Assembly (NCBI GenBank): GCA_000708835.1
Contig: DF236964.1
Span: 1 to 64,000, forward strand
DNA from: Klebsormidium nitens
Taxonomy: Eukaryota; Plantae; Klebsormidiophyceae
Length of the DNA: 64,000 nucleotides
Direction: 5' to 3'
The translations under genes were made by a program, and so were the position numbers. How positions within the stretch are numbered: position 1 is the stretch's first letter; each line of letters starts with the position of its first letter. This document shows, one piece after another, positions 12,634 through 34,100 of this stretch. The notes under the pieces are model-generated. The model had not been told where the DNA came from. It saw nothing but the letters and a program-made list of their open reading frames with translations, and did no database searches.

Positions 12634-15600
12634 TCAGAAGCGGTGCAGCCACGTGTCGGCGGTGCTGTGCAGTGTCCACATGGACATGTTGGCTGCTTGC
12701 GTCACCGTCTCTCGGAACTGGTCGCGCGCTCGCCTGTGCTTGCCGGCGGCCCACAATAGGCGCGCCTCGAAGTACTTTTGGTACACCCGCGCAAACACTG
12801 CGGCAGCACGGGAAACTATCATATAAGCTCACGTGTCGAGCTGAATCTTGCCGGGGTTTCTTTCCAGCCTTTCGGCTCCAAATCGGCTCACGCGTTCTAC
12901 TTCCGCTCCAGTATATGTGACTGAATAGGACTTCTGTGACCATTACTCAAAGAAACGCAGTCAAGTGATCGACCGATTTGGTCGATTTGAAAATCTGAAG
13001 CGTTGAGAATACTAAGGGCGGGGTCTACGCAAATCTGGACTCCTCGCAGGTCCTTCGCAAATCTCCTTTTAGAAGAGTGACTAAGTGGTAGGGAAAACCA
13101 CACTTCCGGGGTCTCGAATTATGCTTCGAACGATTTTTTTCATTGTGGATAAGTTTGTCTTTCTTCCTTGGGCATCCGGCTTCACTGCCAACTTCTGTGA
13201 GATACACTCTGACCCAGGCGGATAAAAACGTGCGCCCTAAAGGCTTGGGAGCTCGTTTCGACGGCTTACCCATCCGCCGACAGACGAAGTTGAAGTGCTT
13301 CGTCAGTGTCGCAATCTGATCCTCCCGGGCGGTCCTTGTGGCGCCACTTGGCAGCTCCACGAGCGAGTCCAGCAAAACCTCCATAACCGCGCAGGTCGCA
13401 GCAGGGGTGAGCGGGCAGAGCGGCGTCCCGCTCGCGAAGCGCGGCAGGAGCGCGGCCGCCCACTCGAGTGCGCGCACGCGTGCGCCCTGGCGCAGCAGCG
13501 CCTCGCAGGCGAAAGCCTTCGCCTGTAATCAACGAGCGCAATCAGTTTCATCAGTTTGCTTGCTGCGTGGAAGAGAATAAGTCATCTATTGTCAAGTTGG
13601 AATGCCCGAAAATAAAAGCGCGGGTAGAGTTTCAAATTGGTTTGATATCCACTCGGCTTACATCTGTCGTGGCGCTAGAAAAACACGCATCCAGTCACCT
13701 TATCCATCCTCCCAGAACTGATGGTTTCAGCTTCTTCATCCTTGCAACCAATCATAATCCAATTTCCCATCTACTTTATGAATTTTCAAGCCGCTACGAA
13801 GGAGCAGCGCCTACCTGCAAGCTGAGGTACTCGGCGACCTTCTCTTTGTGGTTCTGCTCTTCATACGTCGCCTCCATCTCCTCGTATATCCGTAATACCT
13901 CGTCATGTTCGCCGAGCGCCGCGGCCGCGGCCGCGGCTAAACAGGAGCCCCAAAGGTGCAACTCAGGATGATCCCTTCGAGCCTCGATCATGCGCGTGCC
14001 TTCTTGGAAGCAGAAGTTGGACTTGCCCTGACAAGCCAACGAAGAAATGTCAGCTACAGGCGCTAGAACTGTCCTGTGATAGTGAAAGGAAAGGCGTTCT
14101 GTATGATTTTAGAATCTTACAGAACGCGACGACGCGAAGGCACAGAGATTAGACGATGCACTTGAGGTCAGAACAAGAACGTGATGGGTGGTGACGTCTA
14201 GCGTGCTTGCAAGGAAAAGTTGCTGAAGGCCTGGAAACGAAAGGTCAAAGCAGATTCAGGCAATCCAGATTCTCCAAGAAGATGAAGCATTGTAACAGGT
14301 CACGGCCTTTCAGGAGAATAGAATTCTAACCAAGGCAAAGAAGAGACGACGTGGGAAAGCAGATTACCAGAGGCTACAGTTGAAGTACTCCAGTCAGAAG
14401 ATAATGGAGGAAATGAACACGAAGGGACGTACGAAGGAGCCAGGGCCGCCAAGGAACGACGCAGCTCCGCAGCCGGTTCATAATGGGAAACGATACTTGA
14501 AAAAAGGCAAGATTCCAGGTAAGTAGAAGATTGAAGGACACTAGTAAAGAAGGTGACTGTCGCTCTGAAAGATGCTTATTTGGGGACAGCTACTCAGAGA
14601 AACACGAACAAGTTGCAAAGGAGAGAGCTGAAATTTCTGCCGGCCGAACCTGGTAGAGGAAGATCATGGCTCGACAGCAGTTGCAGAGGTCGACCTCCCG
14701 CTGACCCTGGCACAGCTCAAACACGTCCGCCGCATCGCACGCGTACTTATCCGCTTGGATCCACTGACCTGCGGTTAGAAGGGGGGTAAAGCCGGGTTAA
14801 CAGCGGATCTATGATTTGAAATTCGGTCCGTGACAAGCGGTTTCACAGCCAAACACTTCCGCCGCATCGCAGGTATACTTATCCGAGGGAATGACCTGCG
14901 GTTAGAAGGCGGGTTAAGGCGGGTTAGGGCGGGTTAGCAGGTGGTTGATGGCCCGAAATCTCGGTCCTTGAGAAGGGGACCCAGTAACTAGGTTCTGTTC
15001 GAATGCGTCCACTGCGTAACGTGCGAACTTTCGGCCTGACCGCTGTAACCCTGAATGTCAAGGTCGGATTAGCGGCCGAGAACTAGGGTGGGAAGTCAAT
15101 TGTCGTGGGAGTCAGTCTGTGACGGCTCTGCTTCGTTGAAGGCGCTTCAGTATTGACGAGAAGAGGGCAGAGACATCTGCGCTCGACGTCCTTCAGCCGC
15201 ACCGCCTTTTCACACGTGGCGCGCCGCCTTTTCTCGCCTCCGAAAGTTTCTCCTTTCCTCAACCGCAGAAGCTTCCTCAAAAAGCGCGCCAGAAGCCAGG
15301 ACCCCAAAGAGGAGAACGCGCATCCTTGCCAATGCAGACATTGTACGTAGTCGACACAGCCCTTGGCTTCCAACCTGGCACAAGCTTTCCGTTTCCGGAG
15401 CACCGTTGCTGATCCTGGGCGGTTCGATGCTCCCAAAATCCGAATCGTGCGGCTCTAAGGTTGCGTACCGGAGCTTGACCTTCAGATTGGGAAAATGGAT
15501 ACCGGCGTGTGCTAAACAACCCTTTTCAGTATCCGGAAAAGCGAACCAGCCAATGTAAAAGTTCAGAGTAAAGGCGCTGAGAGCCGATTCTCACCGTGGT

Positions 15601-18600
15601 ACAGCGCGGTCAACGCGACGTTGTAGAAGATCTCCGCCGCTTGGACACGTGGCGTGGCCATCTCCGATTGACACTTCTCCAGCACCGCCATGCACTGGCT
15701 CATGCTCGACTCGGCCTCGTCGGGCGCGGCCGCGAGCACCGCGCACAGCGAGTACGCGCGCGCGACGTCGATCTTGAGCGCGGTCGTTGACGTCAGCACG
15801 CAGGTGAGGGCCTGCTTGCTCGCGTACATCGCGACCGCCAGGTCGTTCTGCGCGCGCGGAGAGGGGAAGAGATTAGCTGCCTTCAAATCTGACCCCCTTG
15901 TGACGTGAGCTGATAAGGTTCAACGGGGAGGCCGGTGGGACTCTGAAAACTTGCTGCTCAATACGACAATTCTCGGATCAATTGTCGTCTCTGGCCGGTA
16001 TAAGAATGTCAAAAGTAAGCAGAGACCAAGTGAGAAACAAACCTTACGACAAATCCTTCAAAGCGGAGAATGGCACGAGGCAGTCTGGACTGAGTAATTC
16101 ACGCAACAAAGATGACGACTTCCGTGGATCTGCAGAATGAAGGCCAGCAACGGTTCAAAGACCCTTGACAGCCGTCTGCAACAGACTTTCTCGGCCAATC
16201 AAAGAGAGGACGGAAGAGGGGTAACGGTACGCACCGACGAGGCCGCCAGGCTGCCCAGCTGGTAGAACACGTGGCTCTTGAGCAGCTGCATGCCGGCGAG
16301 TGACGTCAGGTTCTCCATCGTGCCCTTGCGCGCCTCAGAAACCTTCTTCAGCGACTTCTGGGCTTCCAGGAACTTGCGCGGCACGATGTGCTTCAGCCCC
16401 GCGCCGCGGCACCCGCAGAACCGCCAAACCCTGAACCTTCGCGCGCGGAACGACGCGACGCGGGGCCAGGCGGCGGGGACGTGGACGCCGATCTCCTGCA
16501 GGCCACAGGATCGGGATCTCAGGGACTCACGGTTTTACGAGTTTCTCAGCCGTGAACGAACCGGAATCAGTAGTGTTAGAAGTTAAGGTAGAGAAGATAG
16601 CCCTCTTTGGTCGGATGCTCTGATAATGTGTCCGTGCATCTCTCCTTTCGAAGCACTGGGTTTCTAAGCGGCCCCACACACTCGCTAAGCTGTATATCTA
16701 GTGGACCAAGACGCCCATCGGTTTTCGATCTGCTCTTTTATGACTTGCAAACAGTATTTCTTGCAAGAAATTGCCTGGAGTATGCCGTGCCTTAACCGTC
16801 ATCCAACCGCACCGTTATGCACTTCAGCTGTAACTGCGACAGACAGACAGACAGACTCCAAAGAGCCGAACACAAAGAAGGTCCAAAGAAGGGGTCGACC
16901 TCGCTTTTAAGAGCCCACCTGCAAGGAACGCTTCAAATGTTCCATGCTGGAATCCAGCTCGCCCAGCGCCGCATGCGCATAAGCGATGTGCCGGTGCCAC
17001 GTGCCGCGCTGCGTTTGGTCCACGCGGTCCATCTGCCCCATCGTATTACTCAGATGCAGCGCCTCCTCGTAATAGCGTATGGCCGTCCGGTACTGTCCGA
17101 ACTTGAACAGCGCGTCGCGCGCCGCGCGCTCCCAGTAGAACACGGCGTTGTCCGTAACGTCGCACTCTAGATCCTCCACGTCTTTGCAGGCTTGCGTGTA
17201 GTGATGCGCGATGCTGACGCACAGCAAGTCCAACTCGGATTCGCGGGCGACCAGCTCTTGGGCGACGTCCAAGTGGATCGTGCGGCGCTGCTTTGACGGG
17301 AGCATCGACGCCGTAACCTCCATCGTAACCTGCGGGTTAACGCAAGACTTTTTGAGTTTTCAAGTTCGAGTCTTTGCAGTGGCCGGTATTTGGGCGACGT
17401 CTCTGAGTGGATTGTTCAGCGCTTTTTCGAGACGCCTTCACCTGCTCTGGATTTCCACGGTCAGGCTATCTGTGTAATCCAATCGGCTTAAGGGCGTCAT
17501 CTTTTCGGCGGCGTCTCTTCGAGAGTTGCAAGTTTCGAGTTCGATTTTGTCGAAAACCAAAGAGACACGTTCTAGCCTGAATGGAGCCAAAGATGCACAA
17601 CTTCGAAACTCGTTCAGCGACACTTTACTCCGAAGGCTGAGTCTGAGCACATCCCGCGGCAATCTTAGCGAAGTGGTTCGCTCAATCGCTTCAAAAGCCT
17701 CACCGAATTGCTGAAGTGGTACGTCTTGCCGTTCTCCGCCTTTCGGACCGTCAGGAAGTTGAGGTGGTCCAAGTCGTCCAGCGTCCGCAGCAGCTGCTCG
17801 CGTGTGATCGCGGTCAGGCCGTCGCGCACCAGGTGTGACGTCAGCACCGCGAGCAGCAGGTCCGCGTCGAAGTCCATGCCGATCACGCTCGCGAGCTGCG
17901 CGCGCGCAAGGAATGTGGGGGATAAGAAACTGCTTTGACTAGATACGCTGCGTGCATTCACGAACAGTCGCTAACGCCCGAATATCGGATGAGAAAACCG
18001 GGAGAAAGTTCATAAATGTGTACACGCCTCGTGAGGGAAGGAAAGCTGTCGGAGGACGAGAGTTCCGAGCAGGTCTTTGGGTCACGTCAATCGCTTGTAG
18101 CCCATAAGATAGGCATTGTAACGGTGCCTTTCTCGAAACAATATCTTTGGCCAAACCTCATTCTTTGCGTCTGTAACGCCCTTCAGAGGTAGAATATGTC
18201 TCCAGATGCGAAACGTCAGGTCTTCGAAGACGCCAAGAGGGGCCCGCGCGCGCGCGCGCGCGCGCGCTCACCTTCAGCACGTTCGTCTGCAGGGGCGCGA
18301 GCAGATCGACCCTGCTGGTGATGAGCGCTTCCACGGAGTAGCTGAAGCTGTACGTGTCGAGATCGAACTCCTTGCTGACGTGGCACGCGCCGTCGGCCGC
18401 CACGCGGATGATGCCCTTCTCCAGCATGGCGCCCGTCATCTGCTCCACGAACAGGGGGTGACCCTGCAGGGGCAAAAAGAAGGGGGGGTTTGGTGTGAAT
18501 GTGGTCAACGATCAGCCTCAAAAGGGAAAGAGGGCCCCAAATTTGATTGGATCGGTACCTGAAGTCTTGGGATGACTGCGCATAGCTACCATGGGAGTCT

Positions 18601-21600
18601 TGGGAACACAATCCGCTTCTAACAAAGGCACGACGCCGCGTTGCAGCACGTAAATGGATTTTGCGAGCGCCGGAAAATTTATCCATCAACCTTGCTGGAG
18701 TAATTTGTGCACACGACTCTCAGTCAAAGACCACAATGTTGCTCTGAGCCAGTAAAAACCGCTGACGTCCCAGACCCGCCCCGCTTACGTGCGTCTTGCT
18801 GTAGATTGCGTCGAAGACGCTCTCAGGGATCCCCCGGGGCTTCTCCGTCGGGCACACGCGCTTGCAGATCAGCGCACGCGTGTCGCTCGCGGACATCTCG
18901 CGCAGGAAGATCTCGGTAGTGCTGGGTGACGCCACCACGGCCTGGTAGTCGCGCGCGCCGCGCGCGTCGGGCGCGAGCGGCCGGCTCGCGAGCACGCAGA
19001 GCACGCCGCTCGCGGGCTCTTCGCTGATGGCTTTCAGGACCGACCAAGACGGCTCGTCCATTGCCTGCGGGGTTTGAGGGTTTTAGGATTTTAAAACAAG
19101 TTGCAATCATTCACAGGAACATTTGTATGCCCATCAATAGCTTGATTGAATCAACTTTGGGGAGACTTTTTGTTAGGTAGGATTCCGATCGTCCCTTTCA
19201 GTGTTTAGCGGTTTTGGTACGAGGCCCGCGGTTGGCTGCAGGCTGGATGTTCAAGGGTTCGGGGAATGTACTAATACTTTGAGGGTTGAACCTCGCGAAA
19301 ACATGTGGAGCCTTACAATCTCTGCGTGGGCATTGTGGAAACGCTTCAAGAAGTTTGCGTTGAGCGATCCAGCGGGAAGTATCTTCCAAAAATGGTCACG
19401 GAAATGCTGGGTCGCGGTACTAGTTGGAACAGTGCATCCCGAACAAGGCCTTCATTCATTTTACACGCGGCTGATTCTCTTCGTACGAAGTCTCACTGCA
19501 GTGCCATTGGTTCCGTGCCATCTGTTCTTTTTGACCCGTCATTTTTGGAGCAGGCTCGGATTCAAACCGACCTCTTCTGGGGCGCCTGACCAGCGATAAA
19601 GTGGGTCAGAGCAAATAACAGTAGGATAACTGGCTCGTGCAAGTTGCCGATAGCAAGCAGGGTGCCTTCAATGACCTCGCGAACGAAGCAGACCACAATC
19701 CCAAGCATCAAAAGAACATAAAAAGGTCCAATCGAAAGTATTCACGACGGAGATCACCTTCGCTTCTTGGAAGACGAGCACGCAGCGAAGCCAATCTGCG
19801 AAGCAGTCGAGGGATGCGTGGATCGATCAAGACAACATTTTTGTTCGAATCGAAGGCTTTTTCCGGGAAACTCACGTGCGCGTCTTCGACGACGAGCACG
19901 CAAGGCGCCTTGATGAGCGCGAGCACGAGGTGCTTGAGCAGCGTGCACATCTTCTGCGCGCGCAGCTCCGCGGACGCCACCTCCTGCACCGGGGCGATCT
20001 TGAGCAGCCGCTCCACCCGGGTCACGTGGCCGTCCGGCCCGGACTCCTGCGGACAGAATCCGGATCATGAAGTTCGTCCGCATTGTCCGGTTCGGTGTTT
20101 GAAAAGAGATTTCAGGGAATCCGATTGTGAGCAGCCGCTTCTCCGCCGCGGTCACGTGGCTGGAGAAGCGGCTGTTCGCTGTTTGTGCGCGCGCCCAGGC
20201 GCACATCTGCGGACGGATGTTGAATATGTTCTGTCCGAATCGATGCCGTTTTGAACTTCGAGAACACTTCTGCGATTTGGAACTATCGACGGAAGAAACA
20301 AGTCAAATACGAGACCTGCGGACGGAATGCCCAACCAATCCGCTTTGGTGTCATGGAAACAACTTTGTGACTTCAATACGTCGATATAAAGAGCGAGTCA
20401 ATCTTCGGCACCCGATCCACGGGGTTCACGTAGCTGTGCGCGTGCGCACAGCTGCGGCAAAGTGCGCGCGCACGAGGCAATAGCCGTTCAAAAAACTTCC
20501 GGAAAACTCAAACGGGAAAATTTGATCCCCCGACCAGACCTATGTTGTCGATTGAACAGGCGCTGATCTTGTCTCAACACCCTTGTGAATGATCGCCGGC
20601 GGTCTGATCCACCGGATCAGACCCAAGAGCGCATCCCTCGAGGAGTGCAACAGATTTTACTCACCTCACGGATCGTTTGCCCCGGTCCAAACCGCAAGCC
20701 ATCTTTGAGACCGGGACTAGCCCCCCCCGCGTGCGTCATGAACCGTGACCCGCGCCGTCCCCGCACCGGGGCCTCGTCTTCCAACAAATCAGGGGTGTTT
20801 CCCGCAGAGATTTCAACCCGGGGGGGTGCGATCTCGGTGTGGTCATACCCCCCCTCGGCCATGGTGGAGTACCGAGCCCCCCGCCGAGAATTCATCCTAA
20901 GCGCAGCGCCGCTTAACCTGGGAGTACCGGCATCGGATGAGTGTCCCTCCCATTCGGGGGTCTCGATTACAGTGCCCGGTAGCGGTGGTAAGCCCCCCGG
21001 GGGGATGTTTTCAGGGTCGGGACTGTCCCCCCCCCCGGGCATGGACATGCGCCTTAAGGGCCCCCGCAGGTTTTGCAACTCGGACTCAAGCAGGCTCATG
21101 CCGCGCCCTCTGCGCTTCAGCGACGCTTTTCGTGAGAACCTCCGCTTGCCACGTTGCCGCTGGTCGTCCGTCGGATCGTCTCCCGGCGCGCCCGCGGGCG
21201 TCGGAGGCTCGTCGGCAATCGGGGGAAATCGCCCGAGCAGATTCATAAGGGCCGGGGCGTTGTGCTGAGGCGTGGGGGCGTGACTCACACTCGGAGTTTC
21301 GCTCGCATTAAAGTCGCGCCCAGTGCGGGACGGACTGTTCGGTGTGACGCTCTGCGGGGCGCTCATTTTGAGAGCGTCGTTCAGGAAGTAAGCTTGACTC
21401 TGTAGCAGACTAGGTAGGTGCTTGACCACGGCTTGCCCCCGCTGCTCAGGGGAAAGCTCCGGGGGCAGCTCCAATGCGCTGAGCACTAACCGGATCCACG
21501 GCCCGAGCACTTGCTGACCCAACCCGCCAGAACCTCCTGACGTCATCACGACCTGCACCTCCGGGTTCTGCGCCTCGACCTGCGCGCGCATCATGCTGAT

Positions 21601-24600
21601 GAGGCTCGACTTCCCGATCCCCGCCTGGCCCAGGATCAGCACCACGCCCGCGAGCGTCGCCGCTGACGTCATCGCGCGCGCGGTCGGGCTCGCCGGCTGC
21701 GCGAAGCTCTGCGCGCGCGGCGTCGGCCGCAGCGCGCCGTCGCGCGAGGGCTCCATGCTGGGCGACTTGAGAGGGGCGAGCACCAGCTTGTGTTTCGCCC
21801 GAAAGGACTGCCCCGGGTCCTCCATCGCACTTCCGCTGATCAACGATCCGTAATCCGCAATGGTTCCGGAGGACTCGTCCTGGGCGGTGGACCGCCGGAT
21901 TTTCCGGCCGCTGGTCGAGCCGCGGTCGCGTTTCAAGAGGGTTTTGAGGCGAGAAACTTTGGCCAAGAGAAGCGTGAGCTCTTCCTTGCGGCCGACTAAG
22001 AGGAGTTGAGAGAGGGACTCCGTTCCCAGGAATGAGGAATTCTGGGTCAGGGCGTGACCCTTCTTGCCGTCTCGGCCCTTCAGACCTGCGCGAATGAAGA
22101 GGGTTTCGTAAGCTGCGGCAATCGGAAGCACGTGAAGGGCACAATAAAAAGGCCCAAGCGATCCGTGCGCTGAAAAGAACCTTTAGAAAGAAGTGACAGC
22201 AGATCTTGGTGTTCGATCAAGCAGCGCCTCCATCGAGCGCCTTCTTCGACCGCAGTTCGACCAACCTCAAAAAGAACCTCAGAAGATCAACATGACAATC
22301 TTAAAAAGACGGGCTATGCGCTGCAGTTTGTCTGAGCAATTTGAGAACCTCAACGGGGGTCGCTGCCGCTGAGGGCACCTACCAATCTGGCCGACAATTC
22401 GCAAAATAGATGTTACTAGCGGCTGAGAATTTGGACACGGAGAGCCTAGCGTCTCCGATACGTACCGACGGGTCTGTACACGTCCAGCGGTTGCTTCTTC
22501 CCTTTCACGGCCATCGGAGGCAGTGCCACGTACTCTATCGCTGTGTTGGTGGCATCGTAAGTGGCCGAGTCAATCAATACCTGCAGAACGTGCAATGAGA
22601 ACCTGACATTACTGCCTCGCAATTTTATCCCGATGGTTTCTGTACGCCGCCTCTCTGTCAAAGTTGAAGAACACATGGAACAATTTCTGATCCAACGGAG
22701 AGGGAGGCCGTGTTTGTTGCACGGAGGGTCTGGTTTAGCGTGTGACAACGATAGATATGGATGGGCAATTCAAAATGATGATACAAAATCGCCCAAAAGG
22801 TGACAGCGAAACAAGAAAAAATCAATAAGGCTCTAGAAAAAGGTCCTACATTGTAGCACGGACAGCAGATTCGAGCTTGACAACCAGCAAAACAATTACA
22901 GGTGCCAAAACGTCATTTCTCAGAGCGAAGAAACGAGCGCATATTCCTGAGTGAAAGAGTATCTATCAAACTTTTACTGTGGCCTTCCGTTCCAAAGTCC
23001 GCTCCCTCGGTTTGGAGTCTCCAAGACCAGTCATATATATGTGCAACATTATAAGGGGCATCCCTCACCTCGTCCGTTGCTTTCTTCATCAGCCGCGCGC
23101 TCAGGTTGATCGAGTCGCCGTACACCGTGTATTCACACCGCCTCCGGCCGCCCACTGTCGCGCACAGCAGCTTGCCGGTGGTAACACCCGCGACGCCCAT
23201 CTCCCCTATCGCCTTGAGCTTATCGCGTATGGTCAGCGCCGTTTTGACGCCCCGCAGGGGGTCGTCCTGGTGAGTGTTTCCGGGCAGGCCAAACGCGGCG
23301 ATCATGAGGTAGCCTGCACAGCGCAGATCATGGCCGTTGGATATCGGTATTAGACGGATCGTTCAGATGCTCAGGAGGGGGCCGTCGCTTGTACTTATCG
23401 ATGGCAAGAGAGTAGATAAGACAGGGTCCCGGCCAGGGAGGTTGAGATTATTTTTGCGGAAACAGAAACTTAGATGTTGGAACCCAATTTTCATGACAAC
23501 TCAGTGGATCTTTCGCAGAGGTCGAGAGCGGGAACAATCTCGCAAAGGCCTTTCTGTTATGCGCTGGGTTCTGCTTCAAGAAAAAGACGAGAACCGTTTT
23601 CCTCTGCAGTCACCGTTACGGATTGCTAAAGCACTGATGCATCGTACTGAAACGCTGGCCCGCTGACACTTGGATCAATCGATAACATTGATCGGTTTTG
23701 TTGTTTCGTCAAAAAACACCCCGCCTGGCGACCGTGAAGAAACGACCTGCCGGACAAGCTCTGGGTCGACCATAGAGCAATCTCAACTTCCCACTTTACA
23801 CTAAAATTAACCCACCTTTCTCGTCCATCCGCATCTGCAGGAGGCAGCCATCCGTCGCCGCTAGGCACTGCTGCACCGTCGTCAGCACCGTCTGGACACG
23901 TGTCAGCTGCGGGGGCCCGCCAAGTGGCCCCGGGTCCGACAAACTCGGGAGCCCCAGAAAGAGGCACGTGCAGCGCCTGATCTCGGCGAGGGCCGTTGTG
24001 CTGCTGCTGCTGGCCTGGTTATGGAGCAACCGTGTGTATACGCTATCCGGGATGTACGTCCGGAGGCCGCGCACGATCGCGGCCGCGACATCCGGCTGGG
24101 CAGAGAAAACGCGCGAGAGATTTGAAGCTTGTTACCAAATACATGATAAGATTCACGCATTCGTATAAAATGCAGGGAATCTTCCTAGCAACAATTACCG
24201 AACTTTCCTGAGAAGCAAAAGCCAAACCTTCCGTTATGAAGAAATATGCGTTCCGGATTTGCTGTTCCGATCCTATACGACCATCACATTGGACTCGAAT
24301 GCTGACTGCAAGTTCAAGTTAATATCAAGACTCAGCTTCCTCTTCCACATCTCACTGTCCGCGATAGTTTTGAAAATGACAAACAGCAGACCTATCAACG
24401 AATGCGCAGAACGGAAAATACATGTGGTTTAAGAATGCTGGAGTTATCCGCAAAGCTCGAGTTCTTACCTGGTTAAACTCCAGGATCTTCTTCTGTTCTG
24501 GAATCACGATCCGACCCAGCACCCGATTCAGCCGTATAAACCCGTGCTCTAAAACCTCCCCATCGCACTCTTTCCCAATTAGCGCCCACACTTCAGGGGA

Positions 24601-27600
24601 CAAGATGACGTTGCCCGACGTGGCAAAGTGGTCGCACCCCTTGACCTGATCCATCGGCTGACGCAAGACGACGTCAGGGGCGGTAGGATCTTGAGGGGGG
24701 TCCGCCATAAAGTACTCCCAGCGGGGGATGCCGGACTTCAGCTGTGGCTCCCCCCCAACATTCAGGATGCGCACCTGAATTTAGATCAAAGATTTGTTAG
24801 GACCTGGTAACCAGGAATTCCTTGTTTAAAAGGGAATTTTCAACAAAGAATCTCTTCCTTAACCCTAGACTTGACAAGTGAAAGCCATGTTGTTTGATCT
24901 GCACAATATAGTTTGTTTCCATCGATCGAGACAGTCCACTGTCACCACTCTAGAAGTGAATGAACACGCTTTCTTACACTCGTCATTTGCCGCCTCCAAA
25001 CAAGCATCGGATCCAGAGCTTGACGCGAAACACCGGTACCAAGAGGGTTTCGCTTGGTCAAAAAAACACTACCTCCCCAACCCCGACCATCACTTTGAGC
25101 GACAGAGTCAGCGGCGCTGCGATCTCTTGGCTTGTGGCCACAGTGGTCTCCCGCGACTTGCTGATACTGCGCGGCAAAGAGAGAGGAGACGCGTTCAATG
25201 GTGTCATGAGCTGACAGACTAGCTCTGATCATAGCGACCTCGGCTTCAATCCGCACAAACGGCCGCTGAACCGACACAATGACGCGCCAAAGATTCCTCC
25301 GCCGCGAACGGCGAATCGAAAGAAACGACGATTTTGTCCCCCAACCGAACTCTTGCCAAAGGAAGGCCCAGCAATCTATACAGTCTGCTTACCTCATCGT
25401 TTTCGGAAGGGGAAACGTCTTCCCCAGATTCAACCCCCTCGTTTGGCGCGTGGCCTTCGACTTCACGATGGTCACCAGCTGGGCCATCGTGATTGGCTTC
25501 ATGAGGAAGCCGTCCATCCCCGCGTCTAAACAGCCCTTTTTCGCCTGGTCCTCGAGCTGAGCGGTGACCTGTCGCACGAAGAATTAGAATTTTTGAAGTT
25601 TTGTTTCTATAAGAGTATATTTATTTATTCTGAATTTACTCGTATCTCTTAAATTGAGAACCCGGGCTGATAATGATAAGTGTTCCACCGCCGCATTGAA
25701 ACAGTTCTTCTTGGCCTCGTCCTCCAACCGCGCTGTTACCTGACAGCAAGAGGTTCCTAGTCCTGTTTTGCGATTCTCGCTCTTGGGTGACATAGTGGCT
25801 CAAACAATTACTTTGTGCGGAATCCCCTAGTGTTTCCTATCAGCCAATGCTTGCCCCAATCATCCAACTGCACTCTTATCAGTGGATTCATTGGATTCAA
25901 AGCAGCAGAAGCCCGCACACTCAGTCTTCCATGCGCTAGAAACTAGGTAAGGCTGAAATATCTCACCGCAGAGATGAACGTCGGGCGCGCCTGTGGGTCT
26001 TCCAGCTTCCGGATCTCCCGCGTCGCTTCGTACCCGTCCATGACCGGCATCAGCAAATCCATGAAAATCAGCGGAAAGTCGTTCTTCGAAAAAGCCTCCA
26101 CCGCTTCCTTCCCGTTGTTCGCGTGAACCACTTCGCACCCCAGTTTCGTGAGCATCTTGGACAGCACGACCCGGTTGAGAACGATGTCGTCTACTACCAG
26201 GACCTTCATCGCTTGGTCGGCTTTGTTGAGAGTGGACGCGGGGCGGAACGCACCGATCGTGCTGCTCATGTCTTCGTGGCTGCTGTGATCGGTGTCGCCG
26301 TAACCCCCAAGCTGTTACAGGACGGGTTAGGGCAAATTAGCTTCATTACGACGGTCATTCATGCTTATTCGAGAAGGAAAAGCTTCTTTAGAGACGCATG
26401 TACTTGTTTCACGTGTGACTGCTATTGTCTGCCGATCTCTTTGCAGCTGTTGTAAAACGGACAATTGTACGCATCCTGCGGATCGAAAGGACAAACGGAG
26501 GGAAGTGCAGAAACCCGTTTAGAATTTTTGCCGTGCCGGCGCTGCTTCATAACGCCTTAGCTGCCGCAACTGAAGATGCGGCGTTTATATTCAGAGCGTT
26601 AAGCTGTTTTCGTCTTTCTCTCTTCCTTTCAATCCCTTGTCTCCAACCTTTGCTAAGCTCTGGCCAGTTGAACTTGAACATCTGATCCTACTCCAAACAG
26701 TTGCTTGTAGTGTGTCGATCCAAAACGAACCCTGCCAGCTTTGAAAAAGTGTCTGCTTGGCGTATCAAGAGCTTTCCTTTCCTGCGTGACAAAACGCACA
26801 GGAAGCTCACCTGGGGAGTATAGGCGCCAAGCGTGGAAACCAGATCGAACCCGCACGCTGCCGCTCGCAAAGTACAGGCCTCCGGAGTCTGCACAAGGAT
26901 TCAAACAGGTGAGGTATAGTGTAAGTTTCTCGTTATGCCCTTCGAAACGCGGGTTTCATTCCGAGAATCTGTCAGCAGGCCCTTCTTTCAGATACTCCGA
27001 AGCAACTTTCCAAACCCTTCTGATAATTGCTGTGGAAAATGAGTGCGCTTCAAGGTGAATTCAGACCCGATTGGCAGACGCAAAAGCTAGCGGGTTGCTT
27101 GATGTAGGCTGTAGCTCATGAGCTCTGCACGTCAACACCGCAGGACAAAGTCTTGTGAGGCTGTATCACGTCTCTGGTGGACGAATACATGCATCTCGAG
27201 TACAGAAAAAAGTTATCAAATCACAGTAGGAACGGATTGACAGCATTTCTGCAGGAGGGAAGAGTCGGCGAGCAGAGCAAATGCAAAAGATCAGCAGACA
27301 TTGACAGGTCGGGTGTTCAGTCGTTCAGAGGACAGCGATATGCACGTGCGATGTTCGCATAGCGCTTACCTCCTTGGCAGCTCTGTTGACCGGGAATGCA
27401 ACTATCAGGGAGTCCCCTGCAAACTGCACAGACCAAGGTGACAGGGTTTTCGTGAGGAAGCCGAGCATGTGGGGTGATTAGATAGTGAGCCAAAGGCACA
27501 GCGATTGTAGCTCCAGCCGAGAAGTGAACTGTTTTCATCGCAAGTGAACGGCTGTCCACTTGCTAGTCTCGAAAACGGCTGAAACGCAAAACAGTGAAGC

Positions 27601-29442
27601 CTGCTAGTTGAGCTTACCATGATGTTATCGCCTCAATAGTGTCGATGGCCTTGTCAAAAGTACTTGTTCCTGCAACTTAAAATTTTCCAACGTATAGTTC
27701 TACCATAGGATTCTTAAACACTCTGGAACTTCTGGATCTTAGAGCTTGAATCTATCGCGTACATCCTTCAACCCTCACCTTGATGATGTCGCCGCCATAG
27801 TCAAAGACCATGTCAATGGCCTCGTTGAAGTAGTTGTTCATGCACACCGTCAGCTCCTCCACCAGCTCCGTGCCCCGCTTCGACGTCAGCGCGCGCTCCG
27901 TCAGCGGCGTGAAGCCGGTGACGTCAGCAATCATGATGGCGGCCATGAACGAGTTGACCGTTGCCCGGCTGCTGAACGCCTCTGTTTGAAGTGAGGGCAA
28001 TCCTTTAGTGCGGGCGCGTTTTCCGACTCTCTTCTTCTTATAGGTTTTCTGCGTCAATGGCATGCAAGCCGCCGGGCTTCCCTGAAGCTTATGGGGGCGT
28101 GCGGAAACGGGAATCGCAAGGTGGACGAATCCATTTGCAACTCACGAGCTCAGCCTGAGAACGCCAGCTGCGTTGGAAAGGTCATCAAGCATGTGTTCAA
28201 AGTCGCGCACTTGAACGCAGCCCGCTGGCACTTTGAGACTCGGCCTTCAACTGTACAACCGTGCTGTGATTTCAAGTCTTCTTAACAAGTGGACTCCTCT
28301 CGAAACGACGAGCTTGCAAGCGTGGGGCACAGGACTCTGTTCGAATCACTTACTGTCCTTCTCGATAGAAGAAGGACATCGGGGCAACGTTCGGCGTAAG
28401 TCATCTGAAAGAAGGTCGCCTGAATATATCTCATCTAAACAGTCCATGAAGCACTCATTGGTTTACTTGGAGTGCGCAGTCCTCTCACGGTCTCCCAATT
28501 GAAGAATTGGTTCATTTTGACCTTCCAGAAGGGAGACTCTGAACGCGTGCTTGCACGGCTTAGAAACACAATGGATTGATTGATAAGCCAGATATACCGC
28601 AAGCACTGAGCTGATCAGTCAGCCAACTTCGACAGATGCTTACCTGGCTCACTGGCAGCTGCCTGGAGCAGCAGCTTTGGGACGAATGACGAGAGCAACC
28701 GGAGCATGTCCCCCGGGTTTGCAAGCTGCTCTGTGTCAAGACCCGCCAACCGCCCGGTAGTCCCATCCGCCCATCCAGTCGACGAGGCGCTCGACCGTGA
28801 TTGACTTCGTTCCAGAATGCTGATCTGCGAGTCCCGAGACAACACCTTCTCCAATCCTACCGAGCTGCGGGAACCTGCTCTCTCTGCACCGCCTGCTGGT
28901 TCTACTGCTCTTGGCGCTGCTTCTGACGGACCAGTTGAGACCTCAAACACTTTGACGGCCGCAGCGCCTGGAGAGTCTAGGGCGGAGCTGTTCTGGCGCG
29001 AGAGTGCAGCGGACGGACCAGGGACTGATTGCGTCATCGACGATGTGCGCCGAGAGCCGTACTCAGACTCGCCACCGATTGATATGCTTTGGCTGAAGTC
29101 CGAATACCGGCTAGAGTCTGACGCTCCGTCTGACGTTCGTTTGGCTGGGAGCGGCTGGCCGTCGATATCTGGCGAGGAGCTTTGTGGAATGTTGATGAGA
29201 TCAATCTCCAGCACAGCTCCATTCAGAGCTGAGCTAAGTGCACGGCTATATTTATCTCCATCCCTAGATGCTGTCTGCGCACTCTCTGCTGCCTGTGTCT
29301 CTGCATAGGGGAAGATTTGGCCTTGCTTTGCACCCTTCAGTCCATCTTTGATCGCCGCCTCTGCTGGATTACCGCTGACTGGAAAGTAGTCATAATCCTC
29401 GCTGGCCTCTATATCCATCTTAGCGGACGCTTTTGGAGTCAT
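12634..29442 (-). CDS. Soluble adenylyl cyclase (ADCY10/sAC)-like class III cyclase: C1 (with inserted receiver domain), C2, STAND P-loop NTPase, TPR-like C-terminus; >20 exons
   Basis: C1: IADVTGFT..GGDIIK|FAGDS..LSLKVMVGVGE|VRILNVGG..RWEYF..VILSPEVW. C2: YIP..AEIRRCTCLF..MDEKGYLMIAAFGLPG..GVTTG..EYTVYGDSINLSARLM..VKGK. NTPase: LVGRKEEL, Walker A GQAGIGKS, Walker B VLVVEDAH, GHPLF..SRVD.L..LASVIG. TPR-like: AIRYYEEALHL..AYAHAALGELDSSMEHLKRSL. Splice phases checked for the C1/receiver region. Confidence 0.92.
25393..26311 (-). other. Response-regulator receiver (REC) domain exons inside the cyclase C1 domain
   Basis: Exons 26311-25967 and 25568-25393 encode MKVLVVDD..LIFMDLLMPVMDGYEA..SAVTA..MDGFLMKP, with the acidic pair, phosphoacceptor Asp, Thr and Lys-Pro all intact. 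Confidence 0.93.
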
Positions 29443-31109: not shown

Positions 31110-34100
31110 ATGATGAAGGGTGCGAGCAGCTCAAAGGGCTACAGCCCCACCCCCCTGAAGTTCATGTTCTCAGACTCCAAGTATGCACGCCAATCAAAAT
31201 ACTCGCTAGCTGGTACGTTTTTGCTGGGGATAGTCTGTGGATTCTTCATAAGCTGGCACAGATCTCCAGCTCTAGTCTCGGGTCCAGCTCAGATCGCTCT
31301 GGGGTCTTCCGTAGCGTCCAACATCAGGGTTCTAGACGATGAGCTCTTTCTGGGGCCCCAGGAAGGCGATCAGCGGCCGGCACGTTTGGCGAAGTGAGGG
31401 CTTTCTGCATCCGTATTTTGCAAGCAGGCGTTTTGCGGACATTTCAGGGAGAATTTGACAAATGCGAATGCAAGCAGAGTGAAGGAGTGCAGCTTCCTTG
31501 CTTCCAATGAGTGCAGCTCATAAGGCCGCTCGAATATGAATTCCGGTGAAATTAATAGCCGAAGGTAAGAAATGTCACAAATGGGCCTCAAACCAAAAGA
31601 AAGGCCATATAAGCAGGGCTGGAATTAGTCTCAATGTCTATTAGACAGCCATCTTTAAAGTCTCCCTACAAAATCCATGAAATGCCTGTCAAGAGGCCCC
31701 AGGTTTATAGAGGCCTGGGGCGATGCACTTGACAAACATTGCAATGAGCACCTTTCCTACTCAAGCTTCCGGCCTGCAGAACATGGTCAGTAGTTGTTGT
31801 TTAAAGGGTTGGATTAACCTGACACTGGTCCTCTTTACTTGTGAGCTGCGAACCTCAACACAGTCGAGACGTGTACCGCTCCGAAATATAGTTCACGCTT
31901 CCAGGTACGAGCTCAAAGCATCCGCGTACACCACCATTTGTGCACAAGAACAAAGATGCCTCTCCACCCAGAGTAAACCTCTGACGAGAAGTCGAAGTCC
32001 ACGCGAGCAATGATCCAACGCGCTTTTTGTTTCAGGTACGAGCTTAAAGTCCCCGACTACCAGCACGTGTACGACAAGTCGTGGCTCGACGGCGGCTACC
32101 CCAAGGCAAGCTGCTGGGGCTGCCGCTTCGCCGCTGACGTCATCGCCCGCATTCCCGCGCACACGATCCTCGACGCCGGGGCCGGGAACGGAGTGTTGCT
32201 GCGCCAGCTTCGCGCGCACGGGAAAAGCGCGTGGGGGATCGAACTGAGCCAAGCAGTGCTCGACGCTGACTGCCCGGATCTGCTGGAAAGCGGGATCGTC
32301 AAACAGGGCAGTTTGACGAACCTGCCGTACGAGGATAACCAGTTCGATCTGGTTTTCTCCGCGGACGTTTTGGAGCACATCCGGCCGTCCGAGGTGGACC
32401 GCGTTGTCCAGGAGCTGGTGCGAGTCAGCCGGCGCCACCTGTTCTTAAGTATCAGTCTCAAGGGACACACAAAGGTGCGTATTTTGTTGTCAGCATAAAA
32501 GTGCAGCTTTACTGGTGCATGCTAATGGCTCGAATCACATTCAGCGTTGATGTTGCCATCTGCAATCCAAAAGAACAACCTTCTTTTCATTCAAACTACT
32601 TAACTCTAAGCCCATGCTGACGACTTTCAAAGGTCGGGTCACTTCGCCAGGGGTGAATGGTTTTAGAAGTCAGTTTGAGTTACAATCAAGTGGCGACGTC
32701 GACAGCATGCCGATCTCAGAATTTTTGGGCTCGTCAAAAGTTCGCATCGATCAACGCTAACGCCACTCCTTATGCCAATCATTGCAAAACACGCAGTCCT
32801 CGCTCAACGAATCACTCGCCGTCAGACACCCACCTGCAGGCCACCAATCCCTCATTCGTCCCGAAAAGACTGGAGAAACGAATATTTGCCACATTGAAGG
32901 CTTGTCACCGGTCGAACTAGAGCCGTGCATATGCTTTCCAGGTGCGCGGCCGGTAGAAAAGCGGAGTAATCATCCATTCCGGTAATCACTCGCTACCCCA
33001 AAACCTCTTTCCAGGCCGAACTTCCCTTCTTCGCCAAAGACGACTGGATGAAACGAAACCTGCCAAAGTAAAGGCTTGTCGGCCGTTGAATGAAAGCCCG
33101 GCATATGCCTCACAGGTGCGCGCTGGCAGTAATGAGGAGGCCAACCGGCACACGATGCTGCGGCCACGTCACTGGTGGGAGGCCAAGTTCCGGGAGCACG
33201 GCGCGGTGCTGAACCGGGAACTAGTATGGGCGCTCCAGGAGAGAGACGGGCACTTCACCGATAAAGATGTGAGGGCCTCTGTTGTTCTTTTAAGTTGTGA
33301 CAATACTTTCTGGGCGGTACTGGTATGATCCTGCTAAGAAATGGATGGGATCTCAAGCGGAGACTTGTGTAGATAACGTCTCTTGACGGAGTAAAGTCAT
33401 AAATTGCAAGGAGAGCGACGGGCACTTTAGCGTTTGATAGGAAAGGATCCTCAAATTTAAGCGGAGAATGCCCTGTTGACGGCTGTACTTTGCTTTCGTC
33501 GCTACAGAAAGGGCGCTCGGTCTGGTGCTGCATGAGAATCGTATGGTGACCGACCTTACAGACCAATAAAATGAAGCTGGACGTCTCGTGGGATCGGAGA
33601 TGAAGGAACTAGGTGGCGTAGGTGTAGATTTACGTGATCTCAAACCTTATGTTCCCTAGAAAGGTCCTTGAAACATCATTCTTTTGAATGTCAATTAAAG
33701 GGACGACACTCTGACTTTCTGCGGTAACCCCTCCGAGCGAGCAAGGGGGAACTTTTGGCCATTTCCTTCGCTTCCAAAAGATTGAAATACCGTCATCTGC
33801 CGTTTAGTTTCTCGAGCCGAGGGGCAAAAAGAGGAACCACTTTCCGCTTCGTACGCTCCATTATCTACACAGTTGAATATTCTCAATTCGTCTCGCAAAA
33901 ACGGTTTCCGGTTCCGTTTGCAGATGAGGGACTGCCGGACGGAAGGCGTTGCGGACGACGGTGGGAACTACCGGGTGTGCGTTGTGGACAGTCCGTGGCT
34001 GGTGGGCAGCCGTGATCAGGTGAGCCAGCACTTTGACGCGGCGACACCAGCAGTGACGCGCATTGCATATGGTCGCCCTCCTTACAATCCTGGTAACACC

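What the first reader, a model, noticed from the sequence alone, without database searches (positions are those of the whole stretch)
25073..27423. Two-component receiver domain inserted inside the cyclase C1 catalytic domain
The exon chain FAGDSLIVAF (27423-27370) | TPEACTLRAAACG (26888-26811) | REC-1 (26311-25967) | REC-2 (25568-25393) | ..LTLSLKVMVGVGE (25166-25073) joins in frame (phases 0,0,0,2,0). About 190 aa, including an intact phospho-accepting receiver, therefore split the C1 fold. Receivers usually sit N- or C-terminal to cyclases. An internal insertion suggests a His-Asp phosphorelay switch acting directly on catalytic-domain conformation, linking plant-type two-component signalling to cAMP (inference). 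I know of no description of this architecture.
Basis: partly seen in the sequence, partly recalled or inferred. Interest (0 to 1): 0.8.

Follow-up and report, generated by a model that had tools for sequence, protein, structure and literature searches.

The report
Receiver domain inside a soluble-type adenylyl cyclase
An intron-rich algal gene for a soluble-type (sperm-type) adenylyl cyclase carries a complete two-component receiver domain spliced into a surface loop of its first catalytic half, and the same layout is conserved from the alga Mesostigma to liverworts, so cAMP synthesis in this plant lineage is probably controlled by His-Asp phosphorelay in an undescribed way.

Summary
One contig joins cyclase exons A, B and C directly to the first receiver exon. 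Only the junction from the second receiver exon to the next cyclase exon (25393 to 25166) was not covered. It is supported by conserved splice sites and phase in a close relative and by contiguous orthologous proteins.

The gene is a soluble-adenylyl-cyclase-type enzyme (C1-C2, P-loop, TPR). The family profile matches human sAC residues 17-465 at E=8e-84. All catalytic residues I checked are present.

The receiver has the DD, D, T, F and K residues. It sits in the alpha3-beta4 loop of C1, between two long linkers that are predicted disordered in the Mesostigma orthologue.

The same layout occurs in Mesostigma, Marchantia (Mp3g24330) and Riccia. In both liverworts the annotation cuts off the first half of C1. 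Chlorophyte homologues carry domain-less inserts at the same loop.

I found no published description. Regulation by phosphorylation is inferred, not shown. Verdict: a new variant of a known kind. The scan has no other follow-up of this gene.

The parts
28644..29442 (-). N-terminal exon. It is low in complexity and ends ...FVPKLLLQAAASEP. The start codon is not verified.
   Evidence: The 72-nt loose end of contig X1 record 4 maps to 28647-28676, next to a GTAAGC donor. The exon is 38% identical to L002.
27779..27984 (-). Exon A: C1 beta1-alpha1-alpha2-beta2. First metal-binding Asp at 27923-27925 (IADVTGF). Lys of GGDIIK at 27779-27781, equivalent to human sAC K95. The true 5' end is probably 27981, because the CAG is shared with the acceptor.
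   Evidence: human sAC residues 34-96, E=1e-3; joint 27779|27423.
27370..27423 (-). Exon B: FAGDSLIVAF, C1 beta3. Second metal-binding Asp at 27412-27414.
   Evidence: joints on both sides; profile alignment to human D99.
26811..26888 (-). Exon C: C1 helix alpha3 (TPEACTLRAAACGFDLVSTLGAYTPQ). This is the last cyclase element before the insert.
   Evidence: joints 27370|26888 and 26811|26311. 81% identical to Mesostigma. Corresponds to helix 112-130 of the AF2 model.
25967..26311 (-). REC-1 exon: conserved LGGYGDT junction motif, a linker of about 36 aa, then receiver beta1-alpha3. Acidic pair DD at 26186-26191. Phospho-acceptor Asp at 26057-26059 (IFMDLLMP).
   Evidence: Pfam PF00072 E=1.4e-16. 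Spliced to exon C in X1 record 4 and X4 record 14. 85% aa identity to L002, with 25 synonymous and 8 non-synonymous codon changes in the receiver part. Residue coordinates.
25393..25568 (-). REC-2 exon: receiver beta4-alpha5. Thr at 25563-25565, aromatic switch Phe at 25506-25508, Lys at 25497-25499. The start of the C-side linker follows.
   Evidence: Pfam PF00072 profile positions 76-110. Joint 25967|25568. 57 codons compared with L002: 31 synonymous and 1 non-synonymous change.
25073..25166 (-). Exon F: rest of the linker, then C1 strand beta4 (PLTLSLKVMVGVGE).
   Evidence: Joint 25073|24774. The acceptor and phase are conserved in L002. Aligns to LxLK..G.G of uninserted homologues and to human sAC residues 139-151.
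24469..24774 (-). Exon G: C-terminal half of C1 (VRILNVGG...RWEYF...NVILSPEVW...).
   Evidence: Joints 25073|24774 and 24469|24095. Homologues.
23816..24095 (-). Exon H: C1-C2 linker and the start of C2, including the purine-binding Lys (MDEK).
   Evidence: Joint 24469|24095; translation; tblastn.
23067..23313 (-). Exon I: C2 core with EYTVYGDSINLSARLM, which carries the Thr, Asn and Arg of the active site.
   Evidence: Pfam Guanylate_cyc. Contigs end at 23067 with loose ends. Translation.
20617..22131 (-). Large exon with the P-loop (GQAGIGKSS) of the STAND/AAA_16 module. The exon ends are approximate (ORF limits).
   Evidence: Collinear with Mesostigma residues 858-980.
13755..19974 (-). Further C-terminal exons (STAND arm and TPR region). 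Limits are approximate and come from tblastn only.
   Evidence: collinear hits to Mesostigma residues 1207-1909.

Best explanation
The minus-strand gene at about 29442-13755 encodes a soluble-adenylyl-cyclase-type class III cyclase: C1 and C2 in one chain, followed by a P-loop STAND module and TPR repeats.

Two dedicated exons place a canonical phospho-accepting receiver (REC) domain in the surface loop between helix alpha3 and strand beta4 of C1. The receiver is flanked by long flexible linkers. C1 still folds from its two halves, and the receiver hangs off it as a separate globular domain.

This is an old, selected feature of streptophytes. It is present in Mesostigma, in this Klebsormidium-like alga and a close relative, and in the liverworts Marchantia and Riccia.

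Most likely mechanism (inferred):
1. A histidine kinase/HPt relay phosphorylates the receiver Asp (codon 26057-26059).
2. The Thr/Phe switch remodels the alpha4-beta5-alpha5 face of the receiver.
3. The tethered receiver then docks on or releases the catalytic core next to the C1 alpha2/alpha3 helix pair, or dimerises. That helix pair is where Gi-alpha is proposed to act on membrane cyclases.
4. This changes C1-C2 closure and so changes cAMP output.

Shown here: the transcript structure (all but one junction), the domain identities, the catalytic and phospho-acceptor residues, conservation and purifying selection. Inferred: enzyme activity, phosphorylation, and the direction and mechanism of regulation.
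For: RNA: six exact GT-AG joints, including cyclase exon C to REC-1 within a single 507-nt contig.

Domains:
- PF00072 in both receiver exons; 1e-23 and 4e-23 in the full orthologues.
- Family profile against human sAC 4clf residues 17-465, E=8e-84.
- AF2 model of Mesostigma P0218:90-800: pLDDT 76.5, pTM 0.69. Both C1 halves, C2 and the receiver are confident; linkers 136-168 and 289-350 are below 50.
- The top 24 Foldseek hits are all human sAC, target TM 0.76-0.83.

Insertion site: P0218 residues 198-441 replace 27 residues of an uninserted homologue (alignment).

Residues: both metal Asps, the K95 equivalent, and the C2 Lys, Thr, Asn and Arg are present. The receiver DD, D, T, F and K are present and are conserved in Mesostigma, Marchantia and Riccia.

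Conservation:
- Collinear exons in Riccia L001, Marchantia L003 and the close relative L002.
- Only exons align at the DNA level.
- REC-2 has 31 synonymous and 1 non-synonymous codon changes; the E/F splice sites and phase are conserved.

The helix pair in C1 as the proposed Gi-alpha site: PMC7563791.
Against: - No contig covers the REC-2 to exon F junction. If that intron were retained in this species, a TAA follows at once.
- The runs are only guessed to be RNA, and depth is low (2-6).
- No enzymatic, phosphorylation or genetic data exist for any member.
- The linkers are long and poorly conserved, so coupling to catalysis may be weak or absent.
- The same loop holds large domain-less inserts in chlorophytes, so an insert there need not regulate anything.
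- The position of the receiver relative to the core in the model could not be examined.
- The R176 equivalent of the bicarbonate site is Lys here, Ser in Mesostigma and Arg in the liverworts (by-eye alignment).
Confidence: 0.6

Rival explanations
1. The receiver is real and phosphorylatable, but it is not an allosteric switch of catalysis. It serves as a docking or localisation module that recruits the cyclase to a histidine-kinase/HPt complex, or as a phosphate sink. It is placed in a loop that simply tolerates insertions.
For: The linkers are long and predicted disordered. The same loop carries 187-830 aa inserts without any Pfam domain in chlorophyte homologues. Linker sequences differ widely between species.
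Against: The receiver is under purifying selection at least as strong as the catalytic exons. The insertion point has been kept across very deep divergences. Neither fact excludes this reading.
Confidence: 0.2
2. The protein is a pseudo-cyclase. The C1-C2 unit no longer makes cAMP, and the protein works as a STAND/TPR signalling scaffold with a receiver input. Kasahara et al. noted missing catalytic residues in the Marchantia protein Mapoly0178s0022.
For: PMC5159850 states that several conserved catalytic residues are missing in Mapoly0178s0022. Pfam barely detects C1.
Against: The missing residues are explained by truncated models. The Marchantia annotation starts at a Met inside YAGDAMIICFP. 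The exon carrying the first metal Asp (MIADITGF) lies about 1.4 kb upstream, inside a separately called 244-aa gene. The same holds for Riccia. The window and Mesostigma P0218 have both Asps and the C2 Lys, Thr, Asn and Arg.
Confidence: 0.08
3. The receiver exons are not part of the main product. They are cassette exons skipped in the dominant isoform, or the mRNA that includes them ends at the TAA in the retained intron after REC-2 and yields a truncated or degraded product.
For: The junction 25393|25166 is not covered. TAA follows the donor in the window. X4 record 14 retains part of an intron. Marchantia has annotated isoforms that begin inside REC-2.
Against: No joint skipping the receiver exons was seen in four runs. 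One contig links exons A-C to REC-1. In L002 the donor, acceptor and phase are conserved and the stop is not. The Mesostigma, Marchantia and Riccia proteins read through. A truncated product would not explain 31 synonymous against 1 non-synonymous change in REC-2.
Confidence: 0.05

Closest known systems
Mammalian soluble adenylyl cyclase (ADCY10, sAC)
   Same: Tandem C1-C2 catalytic core in one chain, followed by a P-loop STAND module and TPR region. The profile match covers human residues 17-465 (E=8e-84) and the fold match has target TM about 0.8. The metal Asps, the K95 equivalent, and the C2 Lys, Thr, Asn and Arg are conserved.
   Different: Human sAC has a short alpha3-beta4 loop (about residues 131-139) and no receiver. 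Here about 190 aa, including a full receiver, are inserted there. The R176 equivalent of the bicarbonate site is Lys here. There is also an N-terminal low-complexity extension of about 265 aa.
Receiver-linked class III cyclases: cyanobacterial CyaC, Dictyostelium ACR, two-component cyclase opsins (2c-Cyclop; KnRh1/2 in Klebsormidium)
   Same: A His-Asp receiver and a class III cyclase in one polypeptide, so phosphorelay input and cyclic-nucleotide output are combined. ACR is documented in PMC3009899 (listed). KnRh1/2 are reported in earlier scan notes.
   Different: In those proteins the receiver lies N-terminal to a homodimeric cyclase domain, usually with a histidine kinase in the same chain. 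Here there is no kinase domain. The cyclase is the pseudo-heterodimeric sAC type, and the receiver interrupts the catalytic domain itself.
G-protein regulation of membrane adenylyl cyclases (Gs-alpha on the C2 helix pair, Gi-alpha proposed on the quasi-symmetric C1 helix pair)
   Same: The receiver is attached at the C-terminal end of C1 helix alpha3. This is one of the two helices of the C1 groove that is proposed to bind Gi-alpha (PMC7563791; topology).
   Different: The regulator would be a covalently tethered receiver, not a separate G protein. Whether it docks in that groove is pure inference.
Chlorophyte sAC-like proteins (Trebouxia, Micractinium, Chlamydomonas, Volvox, Bryopsis)
   Same: The same family (E of 1e-50 to 1e-66 against Mesostigma) with an insertion at the same C1 loop.
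   Different: Their inserts are 187-830 aa and contain no receiver or any other Pfam domain.
REC-GGDEF diguanylate cyclases (PleD, WspR)
   Same: Receiver phosphorylation controls a nucleotide cyclase of a related fold, through dimerisation (own knowledge; PleD appears among the receiver hits).
   Different: The receiver is N-terminal rather than inserted, and the product is c-di-GMP.

Membership tests
sAC-type class III adenylyl cyclase (ADCY10-like) | Two class III catalytic domains (C1, C2) in tandem in one chain, homologous to sAC over both | tested here: met
   Exon A matches human sAC residues 34-96. The profile of the family, including the orthologues, matches 4clf residues 17-465 at E=8e-84. 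The AF2 model of the orthologue has human sAC as its top 24 hits, target TM 0.76-0.83. Window exons are collinear with the orthologue.
sAC-type class III adenylyl cyclase (ADCY10-like) | Two metal-binding Asp residues in C1 | tested here: met
   IADVTGF (27923-27925) and FAGDS (27412-27414). These columns are nearly invariant (90% or more) in alignment A3.
sAC-type class III adenylyl cyclase (ADCY10-like) | C2 residues for purine recognition and the transition state (Lys, Thr, Asn, Arg) | tested here: met
   MDEK in exon H and EYTVYGDSINLSARLM in exon I, aligned to human DKG and EYTVIGQKVNLAARMM.
sAC-type class III adenylyl cyclase (ADCY10-like) | C-terminal P-loop STAND NTPase and TPR region | tested here: met
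   Weak AAA_16 and nSTAND hits on the 504-aa exon, which has the motif GQAGIGKSS. AAA_16 at 8e-13 plus TPR_12 in Mesostigma P0218 and Marchantia P0212. Collinear tblastn hits down to 13755.
sAC-type class III adenylyl cyclase (ADCY10-like) | Bicarbonate-site residues (human K95, R176) | tested here: inconclusive
   The K95 equivalent is present (GGDIIK). The R176 equivalent is Lys in the window (QVKGC), Ser in Mesostigma and Arg in the liverworts. This rests on a by-eye alignment.
sAC-type class III adenylyl cyclase (ADCY10-like) | cAMP synthesis | not testable with these tools
   No biochemical data. PMC5159850 states that the Marchantia protein is uncharacterised.
CheY-like receiver domain (PF00072) | Profile match over the whole domain | tested here: met
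   REC-1 matches profile positions 1-71 (E=1.4e-16) and REC-2 matches positions 76-110 (E=1.4e-4). The orthologues match positions 1-110 at 1e-23 and 4e-23.
CheY-like receiver domain (PF00072) | Acidic pair, phospho-acceptor Asp, Thr/Ser, aromatic switch residue, Lys | tested here: met
   VVDD, FMDLL, VTAQ and GFLMKP in the window. The same residues occur in Mesostigma, Marchantia and Riccia.
CheY-like receiver domain (PF00072) | (beta-alpha)5 fold | tested here: met
   AF2 model of the orthologue: five alternating strands and helices between residues 173 and 287, pLDDT about 80-90. The window protein itself was not folded.
CheY-like receiver domain (PF00072) | Phosphorylation by an HK/HPt relay | not testable with these tools
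   No data.
Hybrid kinase-receiver-cyclase proteins (CyaC, ACR, 2c-Cyclop) | Histidine kinase domain in the same chain and a receiver N-terminal to the cyclase | tested here: not met
   No HisKA or HATPase_c hit in P0218 or P0212, nor in the window pieces scanned. The receiver lies inside C1.

The most novel reading that the evidence does not exclude
The embedded receiver acts as a covalently tethered counterpart of a heterotrimeric G-protein alpha subunit. When phosphorylated, it docks into (or leaves) the C1 alpha2/alpha3 groove and sets the C1-C2 closure. This would give streptophytes, including land plants (liverworts), a direct His-Asp phosphorelay-to-cAMP switch. It would also be a previously unknown way of regulating a class III cyclase by domain insertion.
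Probability: 0.3. Interest if true: 0.85.

Novelty: new variant of a known kind. Interest (0 to 1): 0.66.

Why it matters
Receiver-controlled cyclases and sAC-type cyclases are each well known. A receiver inserted inside the catalytic domain of an sAC-type enzyme has not been described in anything I could find.

Three points give it weight:
- It is not a one-off. The layout is kept from Mesostigma through Klebsormidium-like algae to liverworts, and the receiver is under strong purifying selection.
- It bears on the long debate about cAMP signalling in plants. It indicates that Marchantia Mp3g24330 (Mapoly0178s0022) is probably a complete sAC-type cyclase. That gene was set aside in 2016 as lacking catalytic residues, but its first C1 half has simply been cut off by annotation. 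It can now be tested in a genetic model.
- For enzymologists, the insertion point next to the helix pair used by G proteins in animal cyclases suggests a natural design for switching cyclases through a tethered domain. Chlorophyte homologues show that the same loop is a hot-spot for insertions.

Tried and rejected
- Nested, separate receiver gene inside a cyclase intron: rejected, because one contig joins exons A-C to REC-1.
- The representative search with exon G found no full-length protein for the window's own gene. I therefore worked from orthologues.
- A word search that included the receiver region was swamped by bacterial hybrid kinases and missed true orthologues. Absence from these searches is weak evidence. 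No moss, hornwort or vascular-plant orthologue was retrieved, and that is weak too.
- The Chara braunii homologue P0140 begins in C2 and is fused to a retroelement, and its gene range is too long to fetch. Its receiver status is unknown.
- Degenerate receiver in the chlorophyte inserts: no Pfam signal.
- MAFFT alignments that included receiver fragments (A1, A2) misplaced the C1 N-halves onto the receiver and were discarded.
I left out the three named rows, plus P0194 and P0162 as the possible fourth, and did not send them anywhere else. Alignment A4 was accepted.
- Literature searches for the architecture, for Mp3g24330 and for Mapoly0178s0022 gave only the 2016 remark.
- I did not verify the organism myself.
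Full report
**1. What is in the sequence**

On the minus strand, 24469-27984 holds seven short exons with canonical GT-AG borders. Their translations are:
- Exon A (27984-27779): ...AAIMIADVTGFTPLTE...GGDIIK
- Exon B (27423-27370): FAGDSLIVAFPVNRAAKE
- Exon C (26888-26811): TPEACTLRAAACGFDLVSTLGAYTPQ
- REC-1 (26311-25967)
- REC-2 (25568-25393)
- Exon F (25166-25073): ...PLTLSLKVMVGVGE
- Exon G (24774-24469): VRILNVGG...RWEYF...NVILSPEVW

The lengths are 206, 54, 78, 345, 176, 94 and 306 nt, which keeps one frame throughout (the end of exon G was corrected). Pfam finds the receiver family PF00072 in REC-1 (E=1.4e-16, profile positions 1-71) and in REC-2 (E=1.4e-4, profile positions 76-110). Exon A matches human soluble adenylyl cyclase (ADCY10) residues 34-96.

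**2. Transcript evidence**

Four small public runs of the same organism hold spliced contigs. All lie on exons only, apart from one retained-intron stretch at 26889-26993, so they are cDNA-like even though the runs are only guessed to be RNA. The contigs give exact joints at:
- 27779|27423
- 27370|26888
- 26811|26311
- 25967|25568
- 25073|24774
- 24469|24095

X1 record 4 (507 nt) carries exons A, B, C and REC-1 in one molecule. That rules out a separate receiver gene nested in an intron.

The junction REC-2|F (25393|25166) is not covered; the contigs stop at 25404 and 25146. In the window an in-frame TAA follows that donor, so this junction needed other support (section 4).

**3. What the gene is**

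The gene continues upstream into a low-complexity exon (28644-29442). The loose end of the same contig maps there.

Downstream it runs through:
- C2 (exons at 24095-23816 and 23313-23067),
- a P-loop exon (about 22131-20617),
- further exons down to about 13755.

All are collinear with a 2034-aa Mesostigma protein.

A profile of the family matches human sAC over both catalytic domains (residues 17-465, E=8e-84). The following residues are present:
- the two C1 metal Asps (IADVTGF, FAGDS),
- the K95 equivalent,
- the C2 Lys (MDEK),
- the C2 Thr, Asn and Arg (EYTVYGDSINLSARLM).

By the residues I could check, this is a competent sAC-type class III cyclase with the usual STAND/TPR tail.

**4. Relatives with the same layout**

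*Mesostigma viride.* Mv16533-RA.1 (P0218) is a full model: C1 N-half, LGGYG, receiver (residues 263-372, Pfam 1e-23), linker, LTLTLKIMIGVGE, C1 C-half, C2, AAA_16, TPR.

*Marchantia polymorpha.* MARPO_0178s0022 / Mp3g24330 (P0212) has the same order but starts at a Met inside YAGDAMIICFP. The exon with MIADITGF lies about 1.4 kb upstream on the same strand, inside a separately called 244-aa gene.

*Riccia fluitans.* R1flu_004567 (P0002) starts at the receiver. Exons A, B and C and the LGGYGDT start of REC-1 lie upstream of the annotated gene, largely within a separately called 262-aa gene. The assembly was identified through PMC11923412.

*A close relative.* The metagenome contig L002 has all exons A-G.
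- Only the exons align at the DNA level (78-83% identity), not the introns.
- REC-1 is 85% and REC-2 is 98% identical in protein.
- REC-2 has 31 synonymous and 1 non-synonymous codon changes over 57 codons.
- The REC-2 donor, the exon F acceptor and the split AG|T Ser codon are conserved. The stop after the donor is not.

Together with the contiguous orthologous proteins, this makes the unobserved junction very likely real.

With the shared insertion point and the shared LGGYG(D)T junction motif, this points to a single ancient insertion. No phylogenetic tree was built.

**5. Where the insert sits**

Against an uninserted homologue, Mesostigma residues 198-441 replace 27 residues (alignment). 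In human sAC numbering this is the alpha3-beta4 loop of C1, about residues 131-139.

The AF2 model of P0218:90-800 has pLDDT 76.5 and pTM 0.69. Both halves of C1, C2 and the receiver (residues 170-288) fold confidently. The two linkers (136-168 and 289-350) have pLDDT below 50. The top 24 structural matches are all human sAC, target TM 0.76-0.83.

So C1 is split in sequence but not in fold. The receiver is a separate domain on long tethers.

Chlorophyte homologues carry 187-830 aa at the same loop with no Pfam domain. The bacterial-like homologues have nothing there. The loop is therefore a permissive hot-spot, and the receiver insert was found here only in streptophytes.

**6. How it probably works**

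The receiver has every residue needed for phosphorylation: DD, D, T, the aromatic switch residue F, and K. All are conserved in four species, and the domain most resembles receivers of hybrid histidine kinases.

The insertion point is the C-terminal end of helix alpha3. This is one of the two C1 helices that form the groove proposed to bind Gi-alpha in membrane cyclases; it is the quasi-symmetric partner of the Gs-alpha site on C2 (PMC7563791).

My best reading is that phosphorylation through an HK/HPt relay changes the alpha4-beta5-alpha5 face of the receiver. The tethered domain then docks on or leaves the core near that groove, or dimerises, and so modulates C1-C2 closure and cAMP output. 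This is inference.

Because the linkers are long and disordered, I consider direct mechanical strain on the fold unlikely.

**7. Rivals**

- The receiver may be only a docking or localisation module in a tolerant loop.
- The protein may be a pseudo-cyclase. This idea rests on the 2016 remark about Mapoly0178s0022 (PMC5159850), which the truncated gene models explain.
- The receiver exons may be skipped, or the transcript truncated. The data in sections 2 and 4 argue against this.

**8. Novelty**

Receiver-linked cyclases (CyaC, ACR, 2c-Cyclop) and sAC are known. An inserted receiver in the catalytic domain was not found in any search.

Public records hide the layout for two reasons. Pfam does not recognise the divergent split C1. 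Two of the three annotated orthologues lack the C1 N-half.

I rate it a new variant of a known kind.

**9. Limits**

- I did not verify the organism. Earlier scan notes call this genome Klebsormidium nitens. My data show only that the nearest relatives of this gene are streptophytes.

Noticed in passing
L003:7463-10039 (Marchantia polymorpha) and L001:2979-5627 (Riccia fluitans): In both liverworts the annotation splits this gene. A separately called upstream gene (244 aa in Marchantia, 262 aa in Riccia) contains the C1 exon with the first metal-binding Asp. The Marchantia main model starts at a Met inside YAGDAMIICFP, and the Riccia model starts at the receiver. This probably explains the published remark that Mapoly0178s0022 lacks catalytic residues.
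   Followed up: partly
P0137, P0138, P0141, P0142, P0143 (chlorophyte homologues); P0144 (Bryopsis): Chlorophyte sAC-like proteins have 650-830 aa (187 aa in Bryopsis) between the FAGD motif and the RWEF motif of C1. This is the same loop that holds the receiver here. No Pfam domain is detectable in these inserts.
   Followed up: partly
window 26889-26993: Contig X4 record 14 runs 105 nt into the intron upstream of exon C while being spliced from exon C to REC-1. This could be a partly processed transcript or an internal start. Mesostigma and Marchantia also have annotated isoforms that begin inside the gene.
   Followed up: no
window 26017-26051: In all four runs a contig of 684-688 nt with much higher depth (67-88) shares only 35 nt, with 3 mismatches, with REC-1 (the DGYEATREIR region). 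It probably comes from a different, strongly expressed receiver-containing transcript.
   Followed up: no
window 25387-25393: The REC-2 donor reads AG|GTAAG, so a retained intron would give an immediate in-frame TAA. In the relative L002 the donor reads AG|GTCAGT and there is no such stop.
   Followed up: yes
L002 (JGI metagenome 3300060285, contig Ga0590115_0003886): An environmental contig of 43.9 kb comes from a close relative of the window's organism: exons are 78-83% identical in DNA and introns cannot be aligned. It is useful for exon-level selection tests elsewhere in this genome.
   Followed up: partly
window 32010-32498 (+): A 162-aa ORF with an ILDAGAGNGVL motif that looks like a SAM-dependent methyltransferase. 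It lies upstream of the cyclase gene on the other strand.
   Followed up: no
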